Source: Podarcis filfolensis | Lineage: Eukaryota | Length of the DNA stretch: 64,000 nucleotides | Direction: 5' to 3' (one strand) | NCBI GenBank assembly: GCA_964270895.1 | Contig: OZ185438.1 | In this document: piece by piece, positions 499-10,065 of the stretch | Position numbering within the stretch: the stretch's first letter is position 1 | Layout: each line of letters starts with the position of its first letter | Program-made: the position numbers and the translations under genes | Notes under the pieces: generated by a model | What the model was told of the DNA's origin: nothing | What the model saw: the letters and a program-made list of their open reading frames with translations, nothing else | Databases searched by the model: none

Positions 499-1190
499 TA
501 GGGTTACCAGACGTCCCCGGTTCCCGGGGACAGTCCCCGGATTTGCAAATCTGTCCCCAGACAAATCCCGCCTCCGGAATGTCCCCAGAGTTGCAAATCT
601 GTTCCCAGGAAATGTGGCAGCGGCAGCCTCAGCAGCCTGGAGCCAGACTGGAGGTGCAGTTGACTCTGGCTGGCTTCAGGAGCTGCTCGCTGCCGTGGCG
701 CCCGCCATTTTTCCTCGCTGAAAGTCCCCATATGATGTGTTGCGCACAAGACACATCATATGGGAACTTCCAGGAGGCAAACTGGTGGGCGCCACGGCAG
801 CGAGCAGCAAGCGGCTTCTGAAGCCAGCCAGAGCCAACTGCGCTACCAGGCTGGCTCTGGGCTGCTGACTGCCACTGCCGCCGCCACTGCAGAAGGGGAA
901 CCGGGGACGTCCGGCGGTACAGATCTCCTGCCCCCTTCTCCCTTTGTTCTGACTGATCGGGGGAGGCTAGGGAGTTGTGGATGGGCGGCCGTTGTCCAGT
1001 TTTTTTAAAACTCTGCGCATTTATGTTTCACAGGGTGCAAAAGAAGGGCTTTGCACCTTTATACAATATGCATGTGTGCTTGGGCCCAGGGTCTTTCACC
1101 TTGCCATCCCCACTACTGACTCCCTGTTGCTACTCAGCTTCCAAAAAAAAAAAAAAAGCCCCATTCATTGAAAAAAATCTGGTAACCGTA
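499..1190. mobile_element. Non-autonomous hAT (Blackjack-like) element with long internal palindrome
   Basis: TIRs TAGGGTTACCAGA / TCTGGTAACCGTA and perfect 8-bp TSD CTCTAGCT (491-498, 1191-1198). Confidence 0.9.
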
Positions 1191-1519: not shown

Positions 1520-1656
1520 GGTGCCAAGATTGCAAGTTCAATCTCTGTATGGGGCAGCTGCATCTTCCTGCACTGCGGGGGGTGGGGGTGGGGGTGGGGG
1601 TGGGGGTTTGGACTAGTTGATCCTCAGGGTCCCTTCCAACTCTATGACTGTATGAT
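1520..1656 (+). mobile_element. tRNA-derived SINE with CR1-type 3' tail (boundaries approximate)
   Basis: Degenerate B-box-like GATTGCAAGTTCAATC followed by the CR1 tail TTGGACTAG...GGTCCCTTCCAACTCTATGA. Contains an expanded (GGGGGT)n tract. Confidence 0.65.
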
Positions 1657-2078: not shown

Positions 2079-2182
2079 GCTTAGGGGTCCCACTCCTTTG
2101 GGCCCCACCAAAAAATTTCACTGTTAATAGACTTCTTCTTAATTGTATTTCAGTTCGGCATTTCAATTAGGGGGTTTGGCTG

Positions 2183-2191
2183 AAGATGGCG
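2183..2191 (+). promoter_or_regulatory. YY1-type motif at the LINE 5' end (putative internal promoter)
   Basis: AAGATGGCG about 27 nt inside the 5' boundary. YY1 sites close to the 5' end are established for mammalian L1 promoters. Confidence 0.5.
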
Positions 2192-2728
2192 CCGAGGTAA
2201 GACGCTCTTATCGGAGCTCAAAGAAATCTTTTAGCTAAATGCCTTTGTTGCTGGCTCTTCTCCTTCTTTTGGATTTTATTTCCTCTCACTACTTCGTATC
2301 TCATCTTCCTCGGTGCCGGGACTTAATGAAGTTAGTGAAGTTTTAACAAAGGCTCTCAGACATTCCCTGCCGGGCTTCAAGGCACTCCCTCCCAGTTTCT
2401 CTTTGACTCCGCGTGACAAACTTACTCCAAGGATTTTGAAGGACTTCTAATGGGCTTTTAACCCTAAAAACTACAAATTCATAAAACCACAAATTTCTCC
2501 CACCACCTTCAATTTCGTGGACCCCCAAACATCTCAGTTGTTTTAACAAACTGAGAAGAAGGGGGGGGGATACTGCAAAGGAGTGCTCTAATTGGACCCA
2601 GTTTTTAAACTCCTCGCAGCAGCCCACCTAGGACGGAATGAAAATTGAACGAGATTGCGACCTGAGAACTTTAATACTTTATCACTCTATTTAGAAGTCT
2701 GATCTCATTGATTTAAGAAGAATCTGCA

Positions 2729-4369
2729 ATGAGAAGAACCAAAAGACTCAGGTGTCTTGACACAGAAACTGACGCAGAGCCCTCTGGTTTCAAACAGAGT
2801 AAGCTAGATAAGTATCTGCTACCTCAAAAACAGCACATATCTCCTCCCAAAAACTCCCTCAACTCTTTACATGGAAAGACAGTTGAAGAGATATCCCTAG
2901 GAATAAACGAGGACAAGGCTACTACTCCCACAACCGAGGCACAAGTACTAATTGATAGAAAGGTGGAGCTGCTGGAGGAATGCTGCCTACTGACTGCTCA
3001 AACAGTTCAAAAAATCTTTGAACAATTACAAAACATCTTCAAGAAGCTGGATAACCCAGATGAAAGGAGGCAACTCACTCCCTTTTTGCCATCCTTAACA
3101 AGCCCTGGAGATAAACAGAACAAATACAAACTCATACCTCTAAACCAGCCAAAAATCAGAGGAAGCCCCCCTCACTCAGTCAACTTGATACTGAGGCCAT
3201 GTGAGATTGTTCTCCACATTTTTCCATACAGAGGGCCCCTACCTTACTGGGAGTCATCCTTTTGGGCCAGACATCATCTAAATCTGCTCCTAGGCCTTGA
3301 GGGGGGAAGGATTGACTTAAAAGCAGTCAAGAGGCTCACTAACGATGGATATTCCAAAAAAGTACTACTAAGATTTGGTAGTCATAGAATCCCAACCGAA
3401 ATCTTAAGGGAAAAGGCTCATTTAGCCCAGAAAGGAATTATTCCACGTCGACACTTTGAAGATATATCACTCAGACCATTGATTGCATCTAAAAGACAGA
3501 ACAAGATGAACAAGGCCATTCCAACAGAAGCCGATATCTGCCCTACTCCCGTGGAAGAACCCAGTAGATGGGAGAAACCGCTGCCAGCTACCCGGGAAAT
3601 CACGCAAGAAAAATCCAAGCTCCCAAACCATGCGATTGTAGCATCAATTAACAGCCTCGCCCTTGACACAACAGACTGGACAGTCCCAGAAGAAGAAGAT
3701 CTGCTGAGTAACTTTACCAACCTACCAGATAAAGAACAAATAAGCATACTCAGTAAACTGACGAAACTACAGGCCAAATTGATCGAAATTCACCAACAAG
3801 GTCAACAAAATGCAGTAGAAACAATACACAATCAAACTTCACACCTATCAGCCCTCTCCCCAAAATGCATAGTTAAAAAGAGAGCTACTAATGGAACTTT
3901 TAAATGTATAGATGCAGAGCTTCAAATCCAGCCTCCTTTAAAATATGAAATGACAAGGAAAAACTCCAGTAATGAGACCACAAATTCCTGGCTGAGATAT
4001 CAAATACTAGCCCCAAACGAAATAGGTACCCCTTATTTAAGTACTACAAAGGATTCTAACACTCCCGAACAAAAGATGACTTCCAACAGACCTGACACAT
4101 TGAGCTCAACATCAAATGAGACCAAAGAAATGGAAGTAGAGACCGAAAACAATCCTACGGTCCATAATAGTCCACCAACCACAGAAATCTCTCAGGAACA
4201 AGGAACAGCTAAGGAAGAAAATCAAGAAAGGGAGGAAATTCTAATTTCCCGCACTTTAAAAAAGAATCTAAAAGATCCACCATTATGTTCCCCACCGAAA
4301 GTAGTGACAAATGGCTGTATCGGCACAAGACAAAATTCCTCGCTGGACTCAATAACAGAATTAGAATGA
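2729..4369 (+). CDS. LINE ORF1 protein, 546 aa (putative coiled coil plus RRM-like region, low-complexity C-terminus)
   Basis: ATG-initiated uninterrupted ORF directly upstream of the EN/RT ORF inside the TSD-bounded element. Confidence 0.85.
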   Translation: MRRTKRLRCLDTETDAEPSGFKQSKLDKYLLPQKQHISPPKNSLNSLHGKTVEEISLGINEDKATTPTTEAQVLIDRKVELLEECCLLTAQTVQKIFEQLQNIFKKLDNPDERRQLTPFLPSLTSPGDKQNKYKLIPLNQPKIRGSPPHSVNLILRPCEIVLHIFPYRGPLPYWESSFWARHHLNLLLGLEGGRIDLKAVKRLTNDGYSKKVLLRFGSHRIPTEILREKAHLAQKGIIPRRHFEDISLRPLIASKRQNKMNKAIPTEADICPTPVEEPSRWEKPLPATREITQEKSKLPNHAIVASINSLALDTTDWTVPEEEDLLSNFTNLPDKEQISILSKLTKLQAKLIEIHQQGQQNAVETIHNQTSHLSALSPKCIVKKRATNGTFKCIDAELQIQPPLKYEMTRKNSSNETTNSWLRYQILAPNEIGTPYLSTTKDSNTPEQKMTSNRPDTLSSTSNETKEMEVETENNPTVHNSPPTTEISQEQGTAKEENQEREEILISRTLKKNLKDPPLCSPPKVVTNGCIGTRQNSSLDSITELE

Positions 4370-7300
4370 CTAAACGCTGTCAACCAGCCACCAACTCAAA
4401 AACGGATTCTACGCTTGCTGTCCTGGAATATTGCAGGGTGGGGAAACAAAGACGGAGACCCAGACCTAATGAACTTCTTTAAAGATTTTGAATTAATACT
4501 TCTACAAGAAACATGGTCAACTAGAGATATTAAAATCAATGGATTCTCCTCCTATACGAAACCCGCACTGAAAACAAACACGAAGGGCCGGCCGAAAGCA
4601 GGGTTCTGTTGTATGATCAAAGACAACTTAGGGTTTGAAATCAAGCAGCTAGAAAAATGCTTGCCACTTGCACAAGCCCTACTTTTAACCCAAAAAGAAG
4701 ATACTTTGCTACTTGTAAATGTCTATATCCCCCCATCCAAAAACAACAGCAACAGTGAAAATTGGTCACAACTAACCTTTTATATAGAAAATTTGACCGC
4801 TAAATACCCAAATGCCTCATTGATAATAGCAGGTGATTTTAATGCCAGAGTGGGAACCAACAATGAACAACTATGTAGCAAACTAAATTGGAATACTGAC
4901 AATGATATCGCACATGCCCTGAAAATAGGACGATTCTCCAGAGATAGGGTTGTAAACAACGAAGGCTTACGCCTACTTGAATTATGTAACAACTTTAATT
5001 TGCAGATTGTGAACGGTTCAACAAAAGGCGATAGAAGCGGGGAGTTTACATACTTCTCCCCCCGAGGATGCAGTGTCATCGACTATATTCTTGTCCCTTA
5101 TAATATTATAAATTCGATCATGGACCTCAAAATCGGAACGCGTACTGAAAGCGACCATCAGCCATTATTGTTGTCTATTAACTTAAAGGATGAAACCAAA
5201 ATAACCAAGCACAATATTATAAAACCCTCTCAATACAAACAAATGACCCAATTAAAATGGTCCCAGGAAATGAGTGCAGTAGTGGGGCAAAAACTTACAG
5301 CCAACCTGAGAAAACAAGTATTATCCAATTTAAAGACCACTAATTCCTACAGCGATATTCCGAAAATTTATAATGAAATCTTCCAAATGTTCGTAGAACT
5401 TAGTACTCCACCTAAAGTTTGGGTACTTAAACATAGCGCTAGCCCTTGGTTTGATGATGAATGTTTCCAGCTAAAAAGAAAACTGCGCCAAACATTTAAA
5501 AATAATCGCACTAAACTAGAGCCCTCTTATCTTGATGAAAAAAGAAAATATCATTACATTCTGGCCGAAAAGAAACAGAAATATGCAACCCAAAAATGGC
5601 TACAATTACTTGACTCAATTCAGAGCAAAAATAACAAAGCGTTCTGGAACCTAGTGTACGGAGGATTGAAAGCCGAAAATCAACTAACTCTACCACCAAT
5701 TGCAGAATCCAAATGGTCCCAATATTTTACATCTGTATTTAACAATCTACACAGTGAACTTAAAGGAAATGAAACCACTAAAAATAAAATCAATAAACTC
5801 CAGGAGTGGCCAAGGGTAGAAGAAGAGGAAATTAGAGAGATAGTTAAAAATTTCAAATCGGGGAAATCTCCTGGGCCAGACGGTCTACCAATAGAATTAT
5901 TTAAGACCTATATAGATTGGTGGGCAGAACCCTTAGCTCAATTGTTTACTCTCATAGATAAATATGGGATCATACCTGAGATATGGTTAAGATCAATAAT
6001 TATCCCAATCTTTAAAAATGGCGACCCAAAAGAACCAAGGAATTATAGACCGATAAGCCTATTATCAGTGATAGGGAAAATCTACGCTAAGCACCTTTTA
6101 TCTAAACTCCTTACCTGGATGAAAAATCTAAATTTACCAGGGAAAGAACAAATAGGTTTCTCCAAAGGTTGCTCTACATTAGACCACTGCCTTATACTTA
6201 TGCATTTGGTTGAAAAATACAGATCTCAAAGGCAATCTAAGATATTTGCTGCTTTTGTAGATTTTCGTGGTGCATTTGACTCAATTGACCGCCCAAAGCT
6301 GTGGAGGAAACTCGCAGAATTAAAAATTGATCAGCGCTTATTGATCCTAATAAAAAATTTATACTCTTCCAATATCTGTCAAGTCAAACTTAACACCAAA
6401 GGTCACCTTTCATCAGACATCCCAAACTCGAAAGGGGTAAAACAAGGGTGTATTCTTGCCCCCTTCCTATTTAATTTATTTTTATCAGACTTGCCAGATC
6501 ACCTTCAAAAAATAGAATCACATGCCCCTAAACTTAATCAGAAACCAGTTTCTCTGTTATTATACGCAGACGATGCTGTTCTACTATCATTAACGAGCTT
6601 GGGTCTGAAACGTCTTATATCTTCTCTGATCCTTTACTGCGAATGTAACAAGCTCTCTATAAATTACGAGAAGACAAAAATTTTGGTCTTCTCGAATGGT
6701 TGGAAATTAGAGAAATGGAAAATAAGAGGGCAGGAAATCCAACAAGTGAAAATCTATAGGTATCTGGGAATCTTATTCCAGAGCAATTTAGGGTGGGCAA
6801 ATCATCGCACAAATGCCATAAAACAGGCAAAGTGCACCTCATCAGCAGTTACCCGTTTTTATTATCAGAAAGGCAATCAATTTATTCCTGCGGCCAATCA
6901 GATATTCCAAACAAAAGTGCAATCCCAGATATTCTATGGAATACCGCTATGGGTCCAAGCATATAATAGTGATTTAAAAAAGATTCACTCCAGCTTTCTG
7001 AGACGTATTCTTGGACTCCCAGCTGTGATCAAATACGAAACAATGTGTGCAGAAATAGGCATACACACAATGGAATATTGGGCCTGGTCCACCTCAATAA
7101 AGTACTGGTTACGCTGCCATTTTCGCTGCCCTCCATCAAGTCTGCTCGCTGATTTGCTCAAAGACTCCTACAAATCAAGATGGTATCAGTACCTCGAAAA
7201 AAAGATTGAATCTTTAGGCATCGAGCTGGAGCCCCTGTACAATTCTAATGAGCAATACATTTTCCATAATATCCTAACTAGACTAAAGGATGTCGAGAGG

Positions 7301-7714
7301 CAAAATATTATGGCAGCTGTAAACAAAATTTGTTCGCCCATATTCTATGATTTAAATATCTTAGATAGCAGAGCCAATTACGTCACCAAATTAATAATTC
7401 CAGCCCAACGTAGGGCTTTTATGCTGGCCCGTTTGAATGTTTTTCCCTCAGCATTTGTCAGGGGAAGATATCAAAACATCCCTAGAAACAAGAGATTCTG
7501 CAGATGTTTTATGAATGTCCCGGACACGGTAGAGCACATTCTCTTTCAGTGCCCATTGTACAGTACGCTCCGTCAACGCGTGCTGTCCCCTCTTTTGGGT
7601 GGTCTGGAGCCCCAACAAGGTGAATGTGTGGGATTCTGCCTATCCGACGTTGACCAAAGGGTAACGGCGGGGGTAGCCGAGTTTTTGGTAGCAGTCCTCC
7701 AAGGAGCAGGTTAA
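4370..7714 (+). CDS. LINE ORF2: APE endonuclease, reverse transcriptase and C-terminal CCHC-type zinc motif (start codon undefined)
   Basis: APE motifs SWN, LQETW, GDFNA, IDY, SDH. RT motifs PGPDG, NYRPISLL, FVDFRGAFDSI, GVKQGCILAP, YADD, YLG. C-terminal CRC-x8-H-x4-C. Frame is open from the codon after the ORF1 stop; track start 4415 is a TTG. Confidence 0.95.
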   Translation, partial: LNAVNQPPTQKRILRLLSWNIAGWGNKDGDPDLMNFFKDFELILLQETWSTRDIKINGFSSYTKPALKTNTKGRPKAGFCCMIKDNLGFEIKQLEKCLPLAQALLLTQKEDTLLLVNVYIPPSKNNSNSENWSQLTFYIENLTAKYPNASLIIAGDFNARVGTNNEQLCSKLNWNTDNDIAHALKIGRFSRDRVVNNEGLRLLELCNNFNLQIVNGSTKGDRSGEFTYFSPRGCSVIDYILVPYNIINSIMDLKIGTRTESDHQPLLLSINLKDETKITKHNIIKPSQYKQMTQLKWSQEMSAVVGQKLTANLRKQVLSNLKTTNSYSDIPKIYNEIFQMFVELSTPPKVWVLKHSASPWFDDECFQLKRKLRQTFKNNRTKLEPSYLDEKRKYHYILAEKKQKYATQKWLQLLDSIQSKNNKAFWNLVYGGLKAENQLTLPPIAESKWSQYFTSVFNNLHSELKGNETTKNKINKLQEWPRVEEEEIREIVKNFKSGKSPGPDGLPIELFKTYIDWWAEPLAQLFTLIDKYGIIPEIWLRSIIIPIFKNGDPKEPRNYRPISLLSVIGKIYAKHLLSKLLTWMKNLNLPGKEQIGFSKGCSTLDHCLILMHLVEKYRSQRQSKIFAAFVDFRGAFDSIDRPKLWRKLAELKIDQRLLILIKNLYSSNICQVKLNTKGHLSSDIPNSKGVKQGCILAPFLFNLFLSDLPDHLQKIESHAPKLNQKPVSLLLYADDAVLLSLTSLGLKRLISSLILYCECNKLSINYEKTKILVFSNGWKLEKWKIRGQEIQQVKIYRYLGILFQSNLGWANHRTNAIKQAKCTSSAVTRFYYQKGNQFIPAANQIFQTKVQSQIFYGIPLWVQAYNSDLKKIHSSFLRRILGLPAVIKYETMCAEIGIHTMEYWAWSTSIKYWLRCHFRCPPSSLLADLLKDSYKSRWYQYLEKKIESLGIELEPLYNSNEQYIFHNILTRLKDVERQNIMAAVNKICSPIFYDLNILDSRANYVTKLIIPAQRRAFMLARLNVFPSAFVRGRYQNIPRNKRFCRCFMNVPDTVEHILFQCPLYSTLRQRVLSPLLGGLEPQQGECVGFCLSDVDQRVTAGVAEFLVAVLQGAG

Positions 7715-8199
7715 CAAGGAAAACCACTGATCTTATATGTATATAAATATATATGTATGTAGCCAACTGCTGCCTTTCTGTATATATCTCAAGGCTTTTA
7801 TATGTTACTTTTTCTTTTATCGTTTTATTTGTATAATGCCTAATAAAGGTTTGAATAAGTAAGTATTTCAGTTCAACAATTACTTCGATAAAATACATTT
7901 TGGTTATGTGCAAATGGCTTTAGATACCTATTAGGTCCATAAGGTATCATATAGCATATATTCAACACAAAAGACAAAGACAATTTGTTGCTGACAAAGG
8001 ACAGCTGGACATAGAAAGGGCCCCATTACCTTCAGTATCTTAGGGCCTCATCAAACCTAAATCCGGCCCAGATACCAACACCACCAACAATGAGGCATAC
8101 TTACTCATGTAAGTGCTCCTCATTACTGACTGCACACTCAATGTGATGCCACAACTCTTGGGTTGGGGCAACTGGCTAAAAGGTTTTAAAAGGTTTTAA

Positions 8200-9600: not shown

Positions 9601-10065
9601 AGCCCTTCACGGCCTAGGACCCTTGTACCTATGGGACCGCCTCTCCCGGTATGCCCCACGGAGAGCCTCAAGGTCCATAAATAGCAACACCCTAGTGGTC
9701 CTGGGCCCTAAGGATGTTAGATTGGCTTCAACCAGAGCCAGGGCCTTTACAACTCTGGCTCCGGCCTGGTGGAACGCTCTGCCTCATGAGACCAGGGCCC
9801 TGCAGGATCTGATTTCTTTCCGCAGGGCCTGTAAGACAGAGTTGTTCCGCCTGGCCTTTGGCTTGGAGCCAATTTGATTCCCTCCCTCTCTTTCTTTTTT
9901 CTTTTCCTTCTCTTCCTGCGATGAGGCTACATTTTAATATTTTAATGTTTCAATATTTTAATGTTGTATTTTAATTTTGTTTTTAAGTTGTAATCATTCA
10001 ACTTGTTTTTACTATTGCTTGTAAGCTGCTCTGAGCCTGGCCTTGGCTGGGGAGGGCGGGGTATA

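What the first reader, a model, noticed from the sequence alone, without database searches (positions are those of the whole stretch)
4360..4475. LINE ORF1 and ORF2 are one frame split by a single UGA in readthrough context (UGA-CUA), and ORF2 lacks a usable AUG
Seen: ORF1 (2729) and ORF2 share a frame. ORF1 ends GAA TGA (4367-4369), followed by CTA AAC GCT... 15 open codons into LLSWNIAGW, the first APE endonuclease motif. The first in-frame ATG lies after that motif (DLM), so initiating there would truncate the endonuclease. Decoding the UGA would give a 1661-aa ORF1-EN-RT fusion. Established: UGA-CUA is the leaky context of alphavirus nsP3/nsP4 and of vertebrate MDH1/LDHB/AQP4 readthrough (there usually CUAG; here CUAA). 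Characterised bicistronic LINEs instead use reinitiation or stop-start coupling (human L1, silkworm SART1). Inference: this family may make its RT as a gag-pol-like readthrough fusion. Competing reading, also visible: an AUG overlaps the stop (ATGA, 4366-4369) in another frame, and removing one A from the A5 run (4398-4402) would join MTKRCQPATNSK to RILRLLSWN. ORF2 could therefore be expressed by stop-start coupling, with this copy carrying a 1-nt insertion, an assembly error or a frameshift site.
Basis: partly seen in the sequence, partly recalled or inferred. Interest (0 to 1): 0.85.

Follow-up and report, generated by a model that had tools for sequence, protein, structure and literature searches.

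The report
LINE with in-frame leaky ORF1 stop
An intact lizard jumping gene (a LINE) and its distant relatives keep their two genes in one reading frame, split by a single stop codon in a "leaky" context, so the reverse transcriptase is probably made as a gag-pol-like fusion by stop-codon readthrough, which the LINE reviews I read do not list.

Summary
ORF1 (2729-4369, 546 aa) and ORF2 (4370-7714) share a frame. They are split only by TGA 4367-4369, followed by CTA. The first in-frame ATG (4469) lies after the invariant endonuclease W-N.

The rival reading (ATGA stop-start coupling plus a 1-nt insertion in the A5 run) is rejected:
- High-copy contigs from four related organisms show no indel. 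They show no listed variant at TGA, CTA or A5.
- A 94% relative has GTGA and CCAAAA of the same length.

Nine deeply diverged lineages (26-52% ORF2 identity) all keep ORF1 and ORF2 in one frame across one stop. Their spacers run from 5 to about 62 codons, always whole codons. Seven more distant LINE lineages with an ORF1 never do this.

In the well-supported core clade the stop is always UGA. It is followed by CUA, CUG, CUU, CAA-CUA or CAA-UUA, which match or resemble the known type II and type I viral readthrough motifs. Most lineages have no AUG before the endonuclease motif.

ORF1p is predicted as a long helix plus an RRM fold.

Best explanation: programmed UGA readthrough gives an ORF1-EN-RT fusion (about 0.6, untested experimentally). 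Main rival: reinitiation at a non-AUG codon.

Two first-reader notes report the same junction elsewhere in this genome.

The parts
2145..2156 (+). 5' target-site duplication gtatttcagttc
   Evidence: Identical 12-mer at 7863-7874.
2157..7862 (+). Full-length non-LTR retrotransposon (5.7 kb). It has no poly(A) and ends ...aataagtaa.
   Evidence: It is bounded by the perfect 12-bp TSD. The bounds agree with note s1-274848.
2729..4369 (+). ORF1, 546 aa plus stop
   Evidence: ORF list and translation. dN/dS against L001 is 0.335, compared with 0.56-0.62 in the other two frames. There is no Pfam hit.
2933..3052 (+). Predicted long helix in ORF1p (aa 69-108), a candidate coiled coil
   Evidence: AF2 model, helix H69-108, pLDDT 51-67. 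The coiled-coil role is inference.
3185..3475 (+). RRM-fold domain of ORF1p (aa 153-249)
   Evidence: AF2 pLDDT is 76-93. Most of the 50 rows shown in the VIA-align wide search are RRM domains, Z 6.2-7.5. They include the human LINE-1 ORF1p central domain 2w7a_B (Z 6.8, rmsd 2.9, 78 aligned). These Z values lie in the range the tool calls common.
4364..4375 (+). Candidate recoding site: GAA UGA CUA AAC (stop at 4367-4369)
   Evidence: Sequence. No variant is listed at these bases in contigs of four organisms. UGA plus C at +4 is kept in L003, L091, L004, L006 and L007.
4370..4420 (+). 17-codon spacer, open in the ORF1/ORF2 frame, with no ATG
   Evidence: L003 has the same 17-codon length. Other lineages have 5 to about 62 codons, always whole codons.
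4370..7714 (+). ORF2 frame, 1114 codons plus stop. EN is at about 4418-5167, RT at 6026-6772, and C-terminal CCHC at 7499-7552.
   Evidence: Pfam: Exo_endo_phos (aa 17-243), Exo_endo_phos_2 (aa 114-266) and RVT_1 (aa 553-801). C1044, H1056 and C1061 are invariant in the alignment. All four CCHC residues, including C1046, were located in the window. dN/dS is 0.11.
4469..4471 (+). First in-frame ATG of the ORF2 frame (codon 34), downstream of the invariant W19/N20
4366..4369 (+). ATGA overlap. Its ATG opens a 38-codon dead-end frame.
   Evidence: It is GTGA in L001/L002 and absent in L003, L091, L006 and L007.
4398..4402 (+). A5 run. It is not an insertion.
   Evidence: No indel is listed in any laid contig. 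L001/L002 read CCAAAA at the same length.

Best explanation
The element is an intact, recently inserted LINE in a lacertid-type lizard genome. Its mRNA carries one long reading frame interrupted by a single UGA.

Proposed mechanism:
- Most ribosomes stop at the UGA and release ORF1p, which is predicted as a long helix plus an RRM and is likely the RNA-coating protein.
- A small share decode UGA with a near-cognate tRNA, because it sits in a leaky context (GAA-UGA-CUA).
- These ribosomes continue through 17 linker codons into the endonuclease and reverse transcriptase, giving a 1661-aa ORF1-EN-RT fusion, much like retroviral gag-pol.

What is shown: the architecture, its conservation across copies, species and deep lineages, the conserved stop identity and 3' context, and the absence of an AUG.

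What is inferred: that readthrough actually happens, how efficient it is, and that the fusion is the active enzyme.
For: 1. The junction is real and is the family's majority state.
- Contigs of four runs from four organisms show no indel in 3400-5400 and no listed variant at TGA, CTA or A5.
- A contig of word-depth about 1466 spans 4333-4712 with two mismatches, neither at the site.
- L001 and L002 (94% ORF2 identity) have GAG TGA CTA in frame. There is no indel over 4785 nt.

2. Nine deep lineages keep ORF1 and ORF2 in one frame across one stop: the window family, L003, L091, L004, L007, L008, L092, L010 and L009. Their spacers are 5, 13, 13, about 15, 17, 17, 20, 21 and about 62 codons, so every length change was a whole number of codons.

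3. Seven more distant lineages with an ORF1 (L011/12, L033, L036, L063, L065, L067, L079) all have it in another frame.

4. On the tree, clade A (SH-aLRT 99) is uniformly same-frame. Two changes of state explain all rows.

5. In clade A the stop is UGA in every lineage. The contexts are UGA CUA, UGA CUG, UGA CUU, UGA CAA CUA (twice) and UGA CAA UUA.
- UGACUA is the type II motif.
- CAA-UUA and CAA-CUA fit the type I CAR-YYA motif, which works in mammals without downstream structure and also with UGA (PMC13517186).
- UAG CAA AUA (L092) and UAG CAA AAA (L009) occur in the sister group.

6. There is no in-frame AUG before the invariant W-N in the window, L003, L091, L006, L007, L092, L010 or L009.

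7. Both ORFs are under purifying selection: dN/dS 0.335 for ORF1 and 0.11 for ORF2.

8. The ORF1p C-terminal half is predicted disordered, so it could serve as a flexible linker in a fusion.

9. No SECIS or other Rfam match, no splice-like joint in the contigs, and no UGGGA (TURBS-like) motif upstream in any lineage.
Against: - There is no experimental or ribosome-level evidence. No run is on record as RNA; X15 and X19 are only guessed to be RNA.
- No stimulatory RNA structure is predicted 3' of the stop (z = +1.6), so efficiency may be low.
- The +7 base is A, not the G of the optimal CUAG.
- Two intact same-frame relatives have non-leaky contexts. L010 has UAA-GGG with no AUG. L008 has UGA-AUU with an AUG 5 codons on. 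L004 also has an AUG 4 codons after its stop. So ORF2 can apparently be reached without a classic leaky context in some lineages.
- Human L1 is reported to translate ORF2 by an unconventional termination/reinitiation route (reviews read). From memory, this does not require an AUG.
- The hosts of the deep relatives are unknown. They come from metagenome or Logan contigs, one contig per lineage in most cases.
- The read-laying table left 41 weaker differences unlisted.
Confidence: 0.6

Rival explanations
1. Termination-reinitiation or non-AUG initiation. Ribosomes finish ORF1 at UGA, and some restart at a near-cognate codon (for example UUG 4415 or CUG 4418) or, in L004 and L008, at the nearby AUG. 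ORF2p is then made as a separate protein, as proposed for human L1 and SART1.
For: - L004 and L008 have an AUG 4-5 codons after the stop.
- L010 is intact with the poorly leaky UAA-G and no AUG.
- CUG or UUG codons lie just before SWN in several lineages.
- Reviews describe reinitiation-type mechanisms for LINE ORF2 (PMC5972666; PMC3894237; PMC2881922).
Against: - Reinitiation puts no constraint on the frame of ORF1 relative to ORF2, yet 9 of 9 assessable lineages of the clade keep one frame through repeated spacer length changes. More distant LINEs with an ORF1 do not.
- It does not explain conservation of UGA and of C at +4 with CUN or CAA-YUA.
- No UGGGA/TURBS-like motif is present.
- ORF1 is long (343-649 aa in complete copies), which the Luke 2013 review argues disfavours classical reinitiation.
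Confidence: 0.25
2. ORF2 is translated from a different RNA, for example a 5'-truncated transcript or one from an internal promoter, starting at a non-AUG codon. The shared frame would then be a historical leftover of an ancestral single ORF.
For: No direct evidence. Single-ORF LINE clades exist (Vingi/Ingi). Contigs cannot show RNA ends.
Against: - The frame is maintained through at least five spacer length changes. The stop sits at a homologous place after a conserved NG[CS]-x15-16 ORF1 tail in the window, L003, L091 and L007, so it is ancient and not a leftover.
- This reading does not explain the conserved leaky context.
Confidence: 0.08
3. ORF2 starts at the AUG of AUGA (4366) by stop-start coupling, and this copy carries a 1-nt insertion, an assembly error or a slip site in the A5 run.
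For: ATGA is present at 4366-4369. Removing one A would join the two frames.
Against: - No indel is listed in contigs of four organisms, including a contig of depth about 1466 over 4333-4712.
- L001 and L002 have GTGA and CCAAAA at the same length, in frame.
- ATGA is absent in L003, L091, L006 and L007.
- The ATG frame stops after 38 codons.
Confidence: 0.02
4. UGA is decoded as selenocysteine, or the stop is removed by splicing or editing.
For: None beyond the stop being UGA.
Against: - No SECIS or other Rfam match in 2100-7900 at E<=1.
- Relatives use UAG or UAA.
- No joints appear in the contigs.
Confidence: 0.01

Closest known systems
Gammaretrovirus (MoMLV) gag-pol readthrough
   Same: An RNA-binding structural ORF and the polymerase ORF share one frame and are split by one stop. 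A minority fusion product would carry the RT.
   Different: MoMLV uses UAG-GGA (type III) and needs a downstream pseudoknot. Here the stop is UGA-CUA and no structure is predicted. There is no protease, and the element is a non-LTR retrotransposon.
Alphavirus nsP3/nsP4 UGA-CUA (type II) and tobamovirus UAG-CAA-UUA (type I) readthrough sites
   Same: The window has the hexanucleotide UGACUA. L007, L004 and L006 have UGA followed by CAA-UUA or CAA-CUA, which fits CAR-YYA. These motifs act in animal cells without structure (PMC13517186).
   Different: The host is a transposon, not a virus. L003 and L091 have CUG and CUU rather than CUA. No function has been tested.
Silkworm SART1 (UAAUG stop-start coupling) and human L1 (63-nt spacer, unconventional reinitiation)
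   Same: These are bicistronic LINE RNAs in which ORF2 translation depends on ribosomes that translated ORF1.
   Different: Neither is described as depending on a shared ORF1/ORF2 frame. Here there is no ORF2-frame AUG at the stop, the frame is conserved, and the stop context is of the leaky type.
Single-ORF and 2A-containing LINEs (Ingi/L1Tc, Vingi, some CR1)
   Same: One long frame, with a recoding event that sets the ratio of upstream to downstream products.
   Different: Those use a 2A peptide skip within ORF2 and mostly lack ORF1. Here a true stop separates a full ORF1 from ORF2.
Plant L1-type LINEs with ORF1 and ORF2 in frame across an amber codon (Arabidopsis ATLN/Ta11). Recalled from memory, not verified here.
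   Same: An in-frame stop between the LINE ORFs, with suppression proposed.
   Different: A different clade and kingdom, and UAG rather than UGA. I could not retrieve the papers, so this is a lead only.

Membership tests
APE-type non-LTR retrotransposon (LINE) | N-terminal AP-endonuclease domain and RT domain in ORF2 | tested here: met
   Pfam RVT_1 1.6e-32, Exo_endo_phos_2 7e-12 and Exo_endo_phos 1.7e-6, all above the curated cut-offs.
APE-type non-LTR retrotransposon (LINE) | Insertion flanked by a target-site duplication, with no LTRs | tested here: met
   Perfect 12-bp TSD at 2145-2156 and 7863-7874.
RTE-X clade (label from note s1-274848) | RT-domain phylogeny placing it with RTE-X reference elements | not testable with these tools
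   No Repbase references were available. In my tree the clade is separate from the RTE/BovB-like rows L017 and L022. It also has a large RRM-type ORF1 and a C-terminal CCHC. The clade name is left open.
L1-like (type II) ORF1p | Coiled coil followed by an RRM domain | tested here: inconclusive
   The RRM fold is supported: Z 6.2-7.5, mostly RRM hits, and L1 ORF1p 2w7a_B at Z 6.8. However, Z below 8 is in the tool's 'common' range. The helix 69-108 is predicted at modest pLDDT. There is no Pfam Transposase_22 hit.
Type II readthrough site (Beier-Grimm) | Hexanucleotide UGACUA or UGACGG | tested here: met
   UGACUA at 4367-4372. Definition from PMC13517186.
Type II readthrough site (Beier-Grimm) | Measurable readthrough in a translation assay | not testable with these tools
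   This needs a reporter assay or ribosome profiling.
Type I readthrough site (stop-CAR-YYA) | Two codons CAR YYA directly 3' of the stop | tested here: not met
   Not met in the window (CUA AAC). Met in relatives L004, L006 (CAA CUA) and L007 (CAA UUA), and nearly met in L092 (CAA AUA).
MoMLV-type (type III) readthrough | Downstream pseudoknot starting about 8 nt after the stop | tested here: not met
   Folding of 4367-4500 gives -17.6 kcal/mol, compared with -23.5 for shuffles (z = +1.6).
SART1-type stop-start coupling | An AUG overlapping the ORF1 stop that opens the ORF2 frame | tested here: not met
   The ATG at 4366 opens a 38-codon dead-end frame. It is not conserved.
Calicivirus-type termination-reinitiation | Upstream TURBS motif (UGGGA) within about 100 nt of the stop | tested here: not met
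   No TGGGA in the 100 nt upstream in any of the 10 junctions.
Selenoprotein recoding | SECIS element in the transcript | tested here: not met
   No SECIS hit in 2100-7900 at E<=1.

The most novel reading that the evidence does not exclude
A deep LINE clade, present in lizards and in other as yet unidentified hosts, makes its endonuclease-RT only as an ORF1-ORF2 fusion by programmed stop-codon readthrough. It would use two short, interchangeable, structure-free signals (UGA-CUN and stop-CAA-YUA). This would be the first non-LTR retrotransposon group shown to use gag-pol-style readthrough. The fusion would physically tie the RT to the ORF1p-coated RNA that encoded it.
Probability: 0.5. Interest if true: 0.8.

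Novelty: new variant of a known kind. Interest (0 to 1): 0.72.

Why it matters
How LINEs translate ORF2 from a bicistronic RNA is a long-standing open question. The reviews I read list stop-start coupling, reinitiation, IRES and 2A skipping, but not readthrough. Ten full-text searches found no paper on LINE readthrough.

A clade with a conserved in-frame leaky stop offers a natural, testable case of a gag-pol strategy in a non-LTR element. The test needs only a short junction fragment in a dual reporter.

If the fusion is real:
- It would give a simple physical basis for cis-preference and for the low ORF2p:ORF1p ratio.
- It would add vertebrate-active examples of UGA-CUN and UGA-CAA-YUA signals.
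- It would warn annotators that such "two ORF" LINEs encode a 1661-aa product and that gene predictors mis-model them (see L009 and the Zootoca LOC entry).

Tried and rejected
- A5/ATGA frameshift reading: rejected.
- Downstream RNA structure: none predicted. I did not attempt covariation because the relatives are too diverged at the DNA level.
- Selenocysteine, IRES or another known RNA family: no Rfam hit.
- TURBS-like motif: absent.
- Other copies in the 64-kb window: none.
- Pfam on ORF1 and its relatives: nothing.
- Word-indexed search with ORF1: found only close lacertid relatives.
- RNA evidence: no run is on record as RNA. X15 and X19 are guesses, so expression is not shown.
- Naming the clade (RTE-X, Proto2 or other): not possible without reference elements. 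The papers read did not describe the junction.
- Literature: ten searches and reads of PMC3894237, PMC5972666, PMC2881922, PMC5009743, PMC1965478 and PMC2861651 gave no LINE readthrough report. The SART1 and L1 primary papers are not held.
- L006 and L093 junctions: too little upstream sequence to assess ORF1. P0063 has no contig on record.
I counted states copy by copy instead.
Full report
**Observation**

The window sequence is as described.
- ORF1 runs 2729-4369 (546 aa) and ends GAA TGA, with TGA at 4367-4369.
- The same frame continues CTA AAC GCT GTC AAC CAG CCA CCA ACT CAA AAA CGG ATT CTA CGC TTG CTG TCC TGG AAT. It stays open to 7714, giving 1114 codons.
- Pfam finds an AP-endonuclease at aa 17-266 and an RT at aa 553-801 of that frame.
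- The only in-frame ATG in the first 60 codons is codon 34 (4469). It lies downstream of W19, N20, G23 and D30, which are invariant in an alignment of eight relatives.
- The ATG of ATGA (4366) opens a frame that stops after 38 codons.
- The element spans 2157-7862 between perfect 12-bp target-site duplications. Both ORFs are intact, so it is a young insertion.
- ORF1's nearest named relative is a Zootoca vivipara LOC entry at 85% identity, so the genome is probably a lacertid lizard.

**Is the junction a quirk of this copy?**

No.
- I laid Logan contigs of four runs, from four coded organisms, on 3400-5400. There were no insertions or deletions, no joints, and no listed base difference at TGA, CTA, the A of ATGA or the A5 run.
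- In run X2 a contig of word-depth about 1466 covers 4333-4712 with two mismatches (4375 and 4568). The high-copy majority form therefore has this junction.
- Caveats: these are contigs, not reads, and 41 weaker differences were not listed.
- Two contigs encoding a 94%-identical ORF2 (L001, L002) read GAG TGA CTA AAT ... ACT CCA AAA CGG. They have no ATGA. The A5 run is replaced by CCAAAA of the same length, so the difference is a substitution.
- Window and L001 align without a gap over 4785 nt. dN/dS is 0.335 for ORF1 (0.56-0.62 in the wrong frames) and 0.11 for ORF2.

**Deep relatives**

An exhaustive HMMER search with ORF2 and contig look-ups gave the independent lineages listed below. Pairwise ORF2 identity among the seven lineages compared is 26-41%. 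L091 is 43-52% identical to L003.

| Lineage | Junction | ATG before the EN motif? |
|---|---|---|
| L003 | GAT TGA CTG GTC | no |
| L091 | GAT TGA CTT CCA | no (copy frameshifted further downstream) |
| L004/L005 | ATA TGA CAA CTA AAG GAA ATG | yes, 4 codons after the stop |
| L006 | GTC TGA CAA CTA | no (upstream too short to judge ORF1) |
| L007 | GAC TGA CAA TTA AAG | no |
| L008 | AGA TGA ATT ... ATG | yes, 5 codons after the stop |
| L092 | GAA TAG CAA ATA AAG TTG | no |
| L010 | GAA TAA GGG TGC | no |
| L009 | TAG CAA AAA, with 328 open codons upstream in frame | no |

- In every lineage where ORF1 can be assessed (nine, counting the window family), ORF1 and ORF2 are in one frame across one stop.
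- The spacers are 5, 13, 13, about 15, 17, 17, 20, 21 and about 62 codons. Each length change kept the frame.
- As a control, I ran the same script on more distant LINEs fetched from metagenomes (22-28% identity). Seven lineages had an ORF1 of at least 120 codons next to ORF2, and all seven had it in a different frame.
- On a maximum-likelihood tree the window sits in clade A (98/99, SH-aLRT 99). Clade A is L008, L007, (L004, L006), ((window, L001), (L003, L091)). All are same-frame where assessable, and all use UGA.
- L009, L010 and L092 fall in the neighbouring group, together with one other-frame lineage (L012). Two changes of state suffice on the tree.
- These lineages are related, so the counts are not independent trials. 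The fairer argument is that the frame persisted through at least five spacer length changes and near-saturating divergence.

**Stop context**

- In clade A the stop is always UGA. In six of the seven junctions the +4 base is C: CUA, CUG, CUU, CAA-CUA (twice) and CAA-UUA.
- A 2026 review gives UGACUA and UGACGG as the type II motifs and UAG-CAR-YYA as type I. It states that type I works in mammals without a downstream structure and that UGA can replace UAG. It also states that CAAUUA-derived and CUAG-derived contexts gave more than 15% UGA readthrough in saturation mutagenesis (PMC13517186).
- The residues encoded here (L, or Q-L) sit in a variable linker. Conservation at these bases therefore looks like a nucleotide signal rather than protein constraint. 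This step is inference.
- No structure is predicted 3' of the stop.
- There is no SECIS or other Rfam family and no TURBS-like UGGGA motif.

**ORF1p**

- There is no Pfam hit.
- ORF1s of the clade share a roughly 100-aa block and, in four lineages, a tail NG[CS]-x15-16 ending in acidic residues just before the stop. The stop is therefore at a homologous, ancient position.
- An AF2 model shows a long helix (aa 69-108), a confident beta-alpha-beta-beta-alpha-beta domain (aa 150-247, pLDDT 76-93) and a largely disordered C-terminal half.
- A full PDB-representative search returned mostly RRM domains (Z 6.2-7.5), including the human L1 ORF1p central domain (Z 6.8).
- The Z values are in the range the tool calls common, so the RRM assignment is likely but not proven.

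**Mechanism**

The best-supported reading is programmed UGA readthrough. It would give mostly ORF1p and a minority 1661-aa ORF1-EN-RT fusion, analogous to gag-pol. I put this at about 0.6.

The main rival is reinitiation or non-AUG initiation after ORF1 termination (about 0.25). This is the mechanism proposed for L1 and SART1 in the reviews read.
- For the rival: L004 and L008 have a nearby AUG. L010 is intact with UAA-G and no AUG.
- Against the rival: it does not explain the conserved frame, the UGA identity or the 3' context.

**Known or new?**

- Two LINE reviews (PMC2881922, PMC3894237) and one reinitiation review (PMC5972666) do not list readthrough for ORF2.
- Ten full-text searches found no such report.
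- From memory only, in-frame amber-separated ORFs have been noted in Arabidopsis LINEs. I could not verify this.
- The clade name remains open. RTE-X comes from a first-reader note. My tree separates the clade from RTE/BovB-like rows, but it lacks reference elements.
- I classify the finding as a new variant of a known kind: a LINE using a virus-type readthrough strategy.
- Two first-reader notes (s1-317998, s1-268817) report the same GAA-TGA-CTA junction on other pieces of this genome. I did not read those places, but the high-copy contigs agree with them.

Noticed in passing
window 615-870: A long inverted repeat. Its arms (cagcggcagcctcagcagcctggagccagactgg... and the reverse complement) surround a palindromic core, tccccatatgatgtgttgcgcacaagacacatcatatgggaa. 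It lies upstream of the LINE.
   Followed up: no
window 1575-1607: A G-rich (GGGGT)n-like microsatellite, ggggtgggggtgggggtgggggtggggg.
   Followed up: no
L009 3501-12828 (NCBI GCA_030710605.1, CP092874.1): The deposited gene model P0139 (1353 aa) joins a 437-aa N-terminal part to the EN-RT part. The genomic frame, however, has an in-frame TAG at 9898. The predictor seems to have spliced around the LINE's ORF1 stop.
   Followed up: partly
P0059 (Zootoca vivipara LOC118077222): A 362-aa 'uncharacterized protein' in the NCBI annotation is 85% identical to this LINE's ORF1p. A transposon ORF1 has been annotated as a host gene.
   Followed up: no
L006 1-90: Upstream of its TGA CAA CTA junction, this copy has short repeats of tctgagcatg and several in-frame stops. 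They leave only a 3-codon ATG TGT GTC mini-ORF before the stop. ORF1 may be lost or replaced, or the copy may be rearranged.
   Followed up: no
L091 1740-1765 and 3364-3422: This relative keeps the in-frame UGA-CUU junction, but its ORF2 is broken by frameshifts. One lies at a T run between the SWN and QETW motifs. It is a decayed copy.
   Followed up: partly
window 4364-4366 and homologous sites in L001, L003, L091, L007: The codon before the stop is always GAN (Glu or Asp) in the window/L003/L091/L007 group. It ends a conserved acidic ORF1 tail. It may be part of the signal or a protein feature.
   Followed up: no
same genome, other pieces (notes s1-302362, s1-333227, s1-313989, s1-287831, s1-292338): First-reader notes describe several roughly 2.1-kb 'half-L1-like' elements that keep ORF1 but lack nearly all of ORF2. 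They are unrelated to this finding, but they suggest ORF1-only non-autonomous LINE derivatives in this genome.
   Followed up: no
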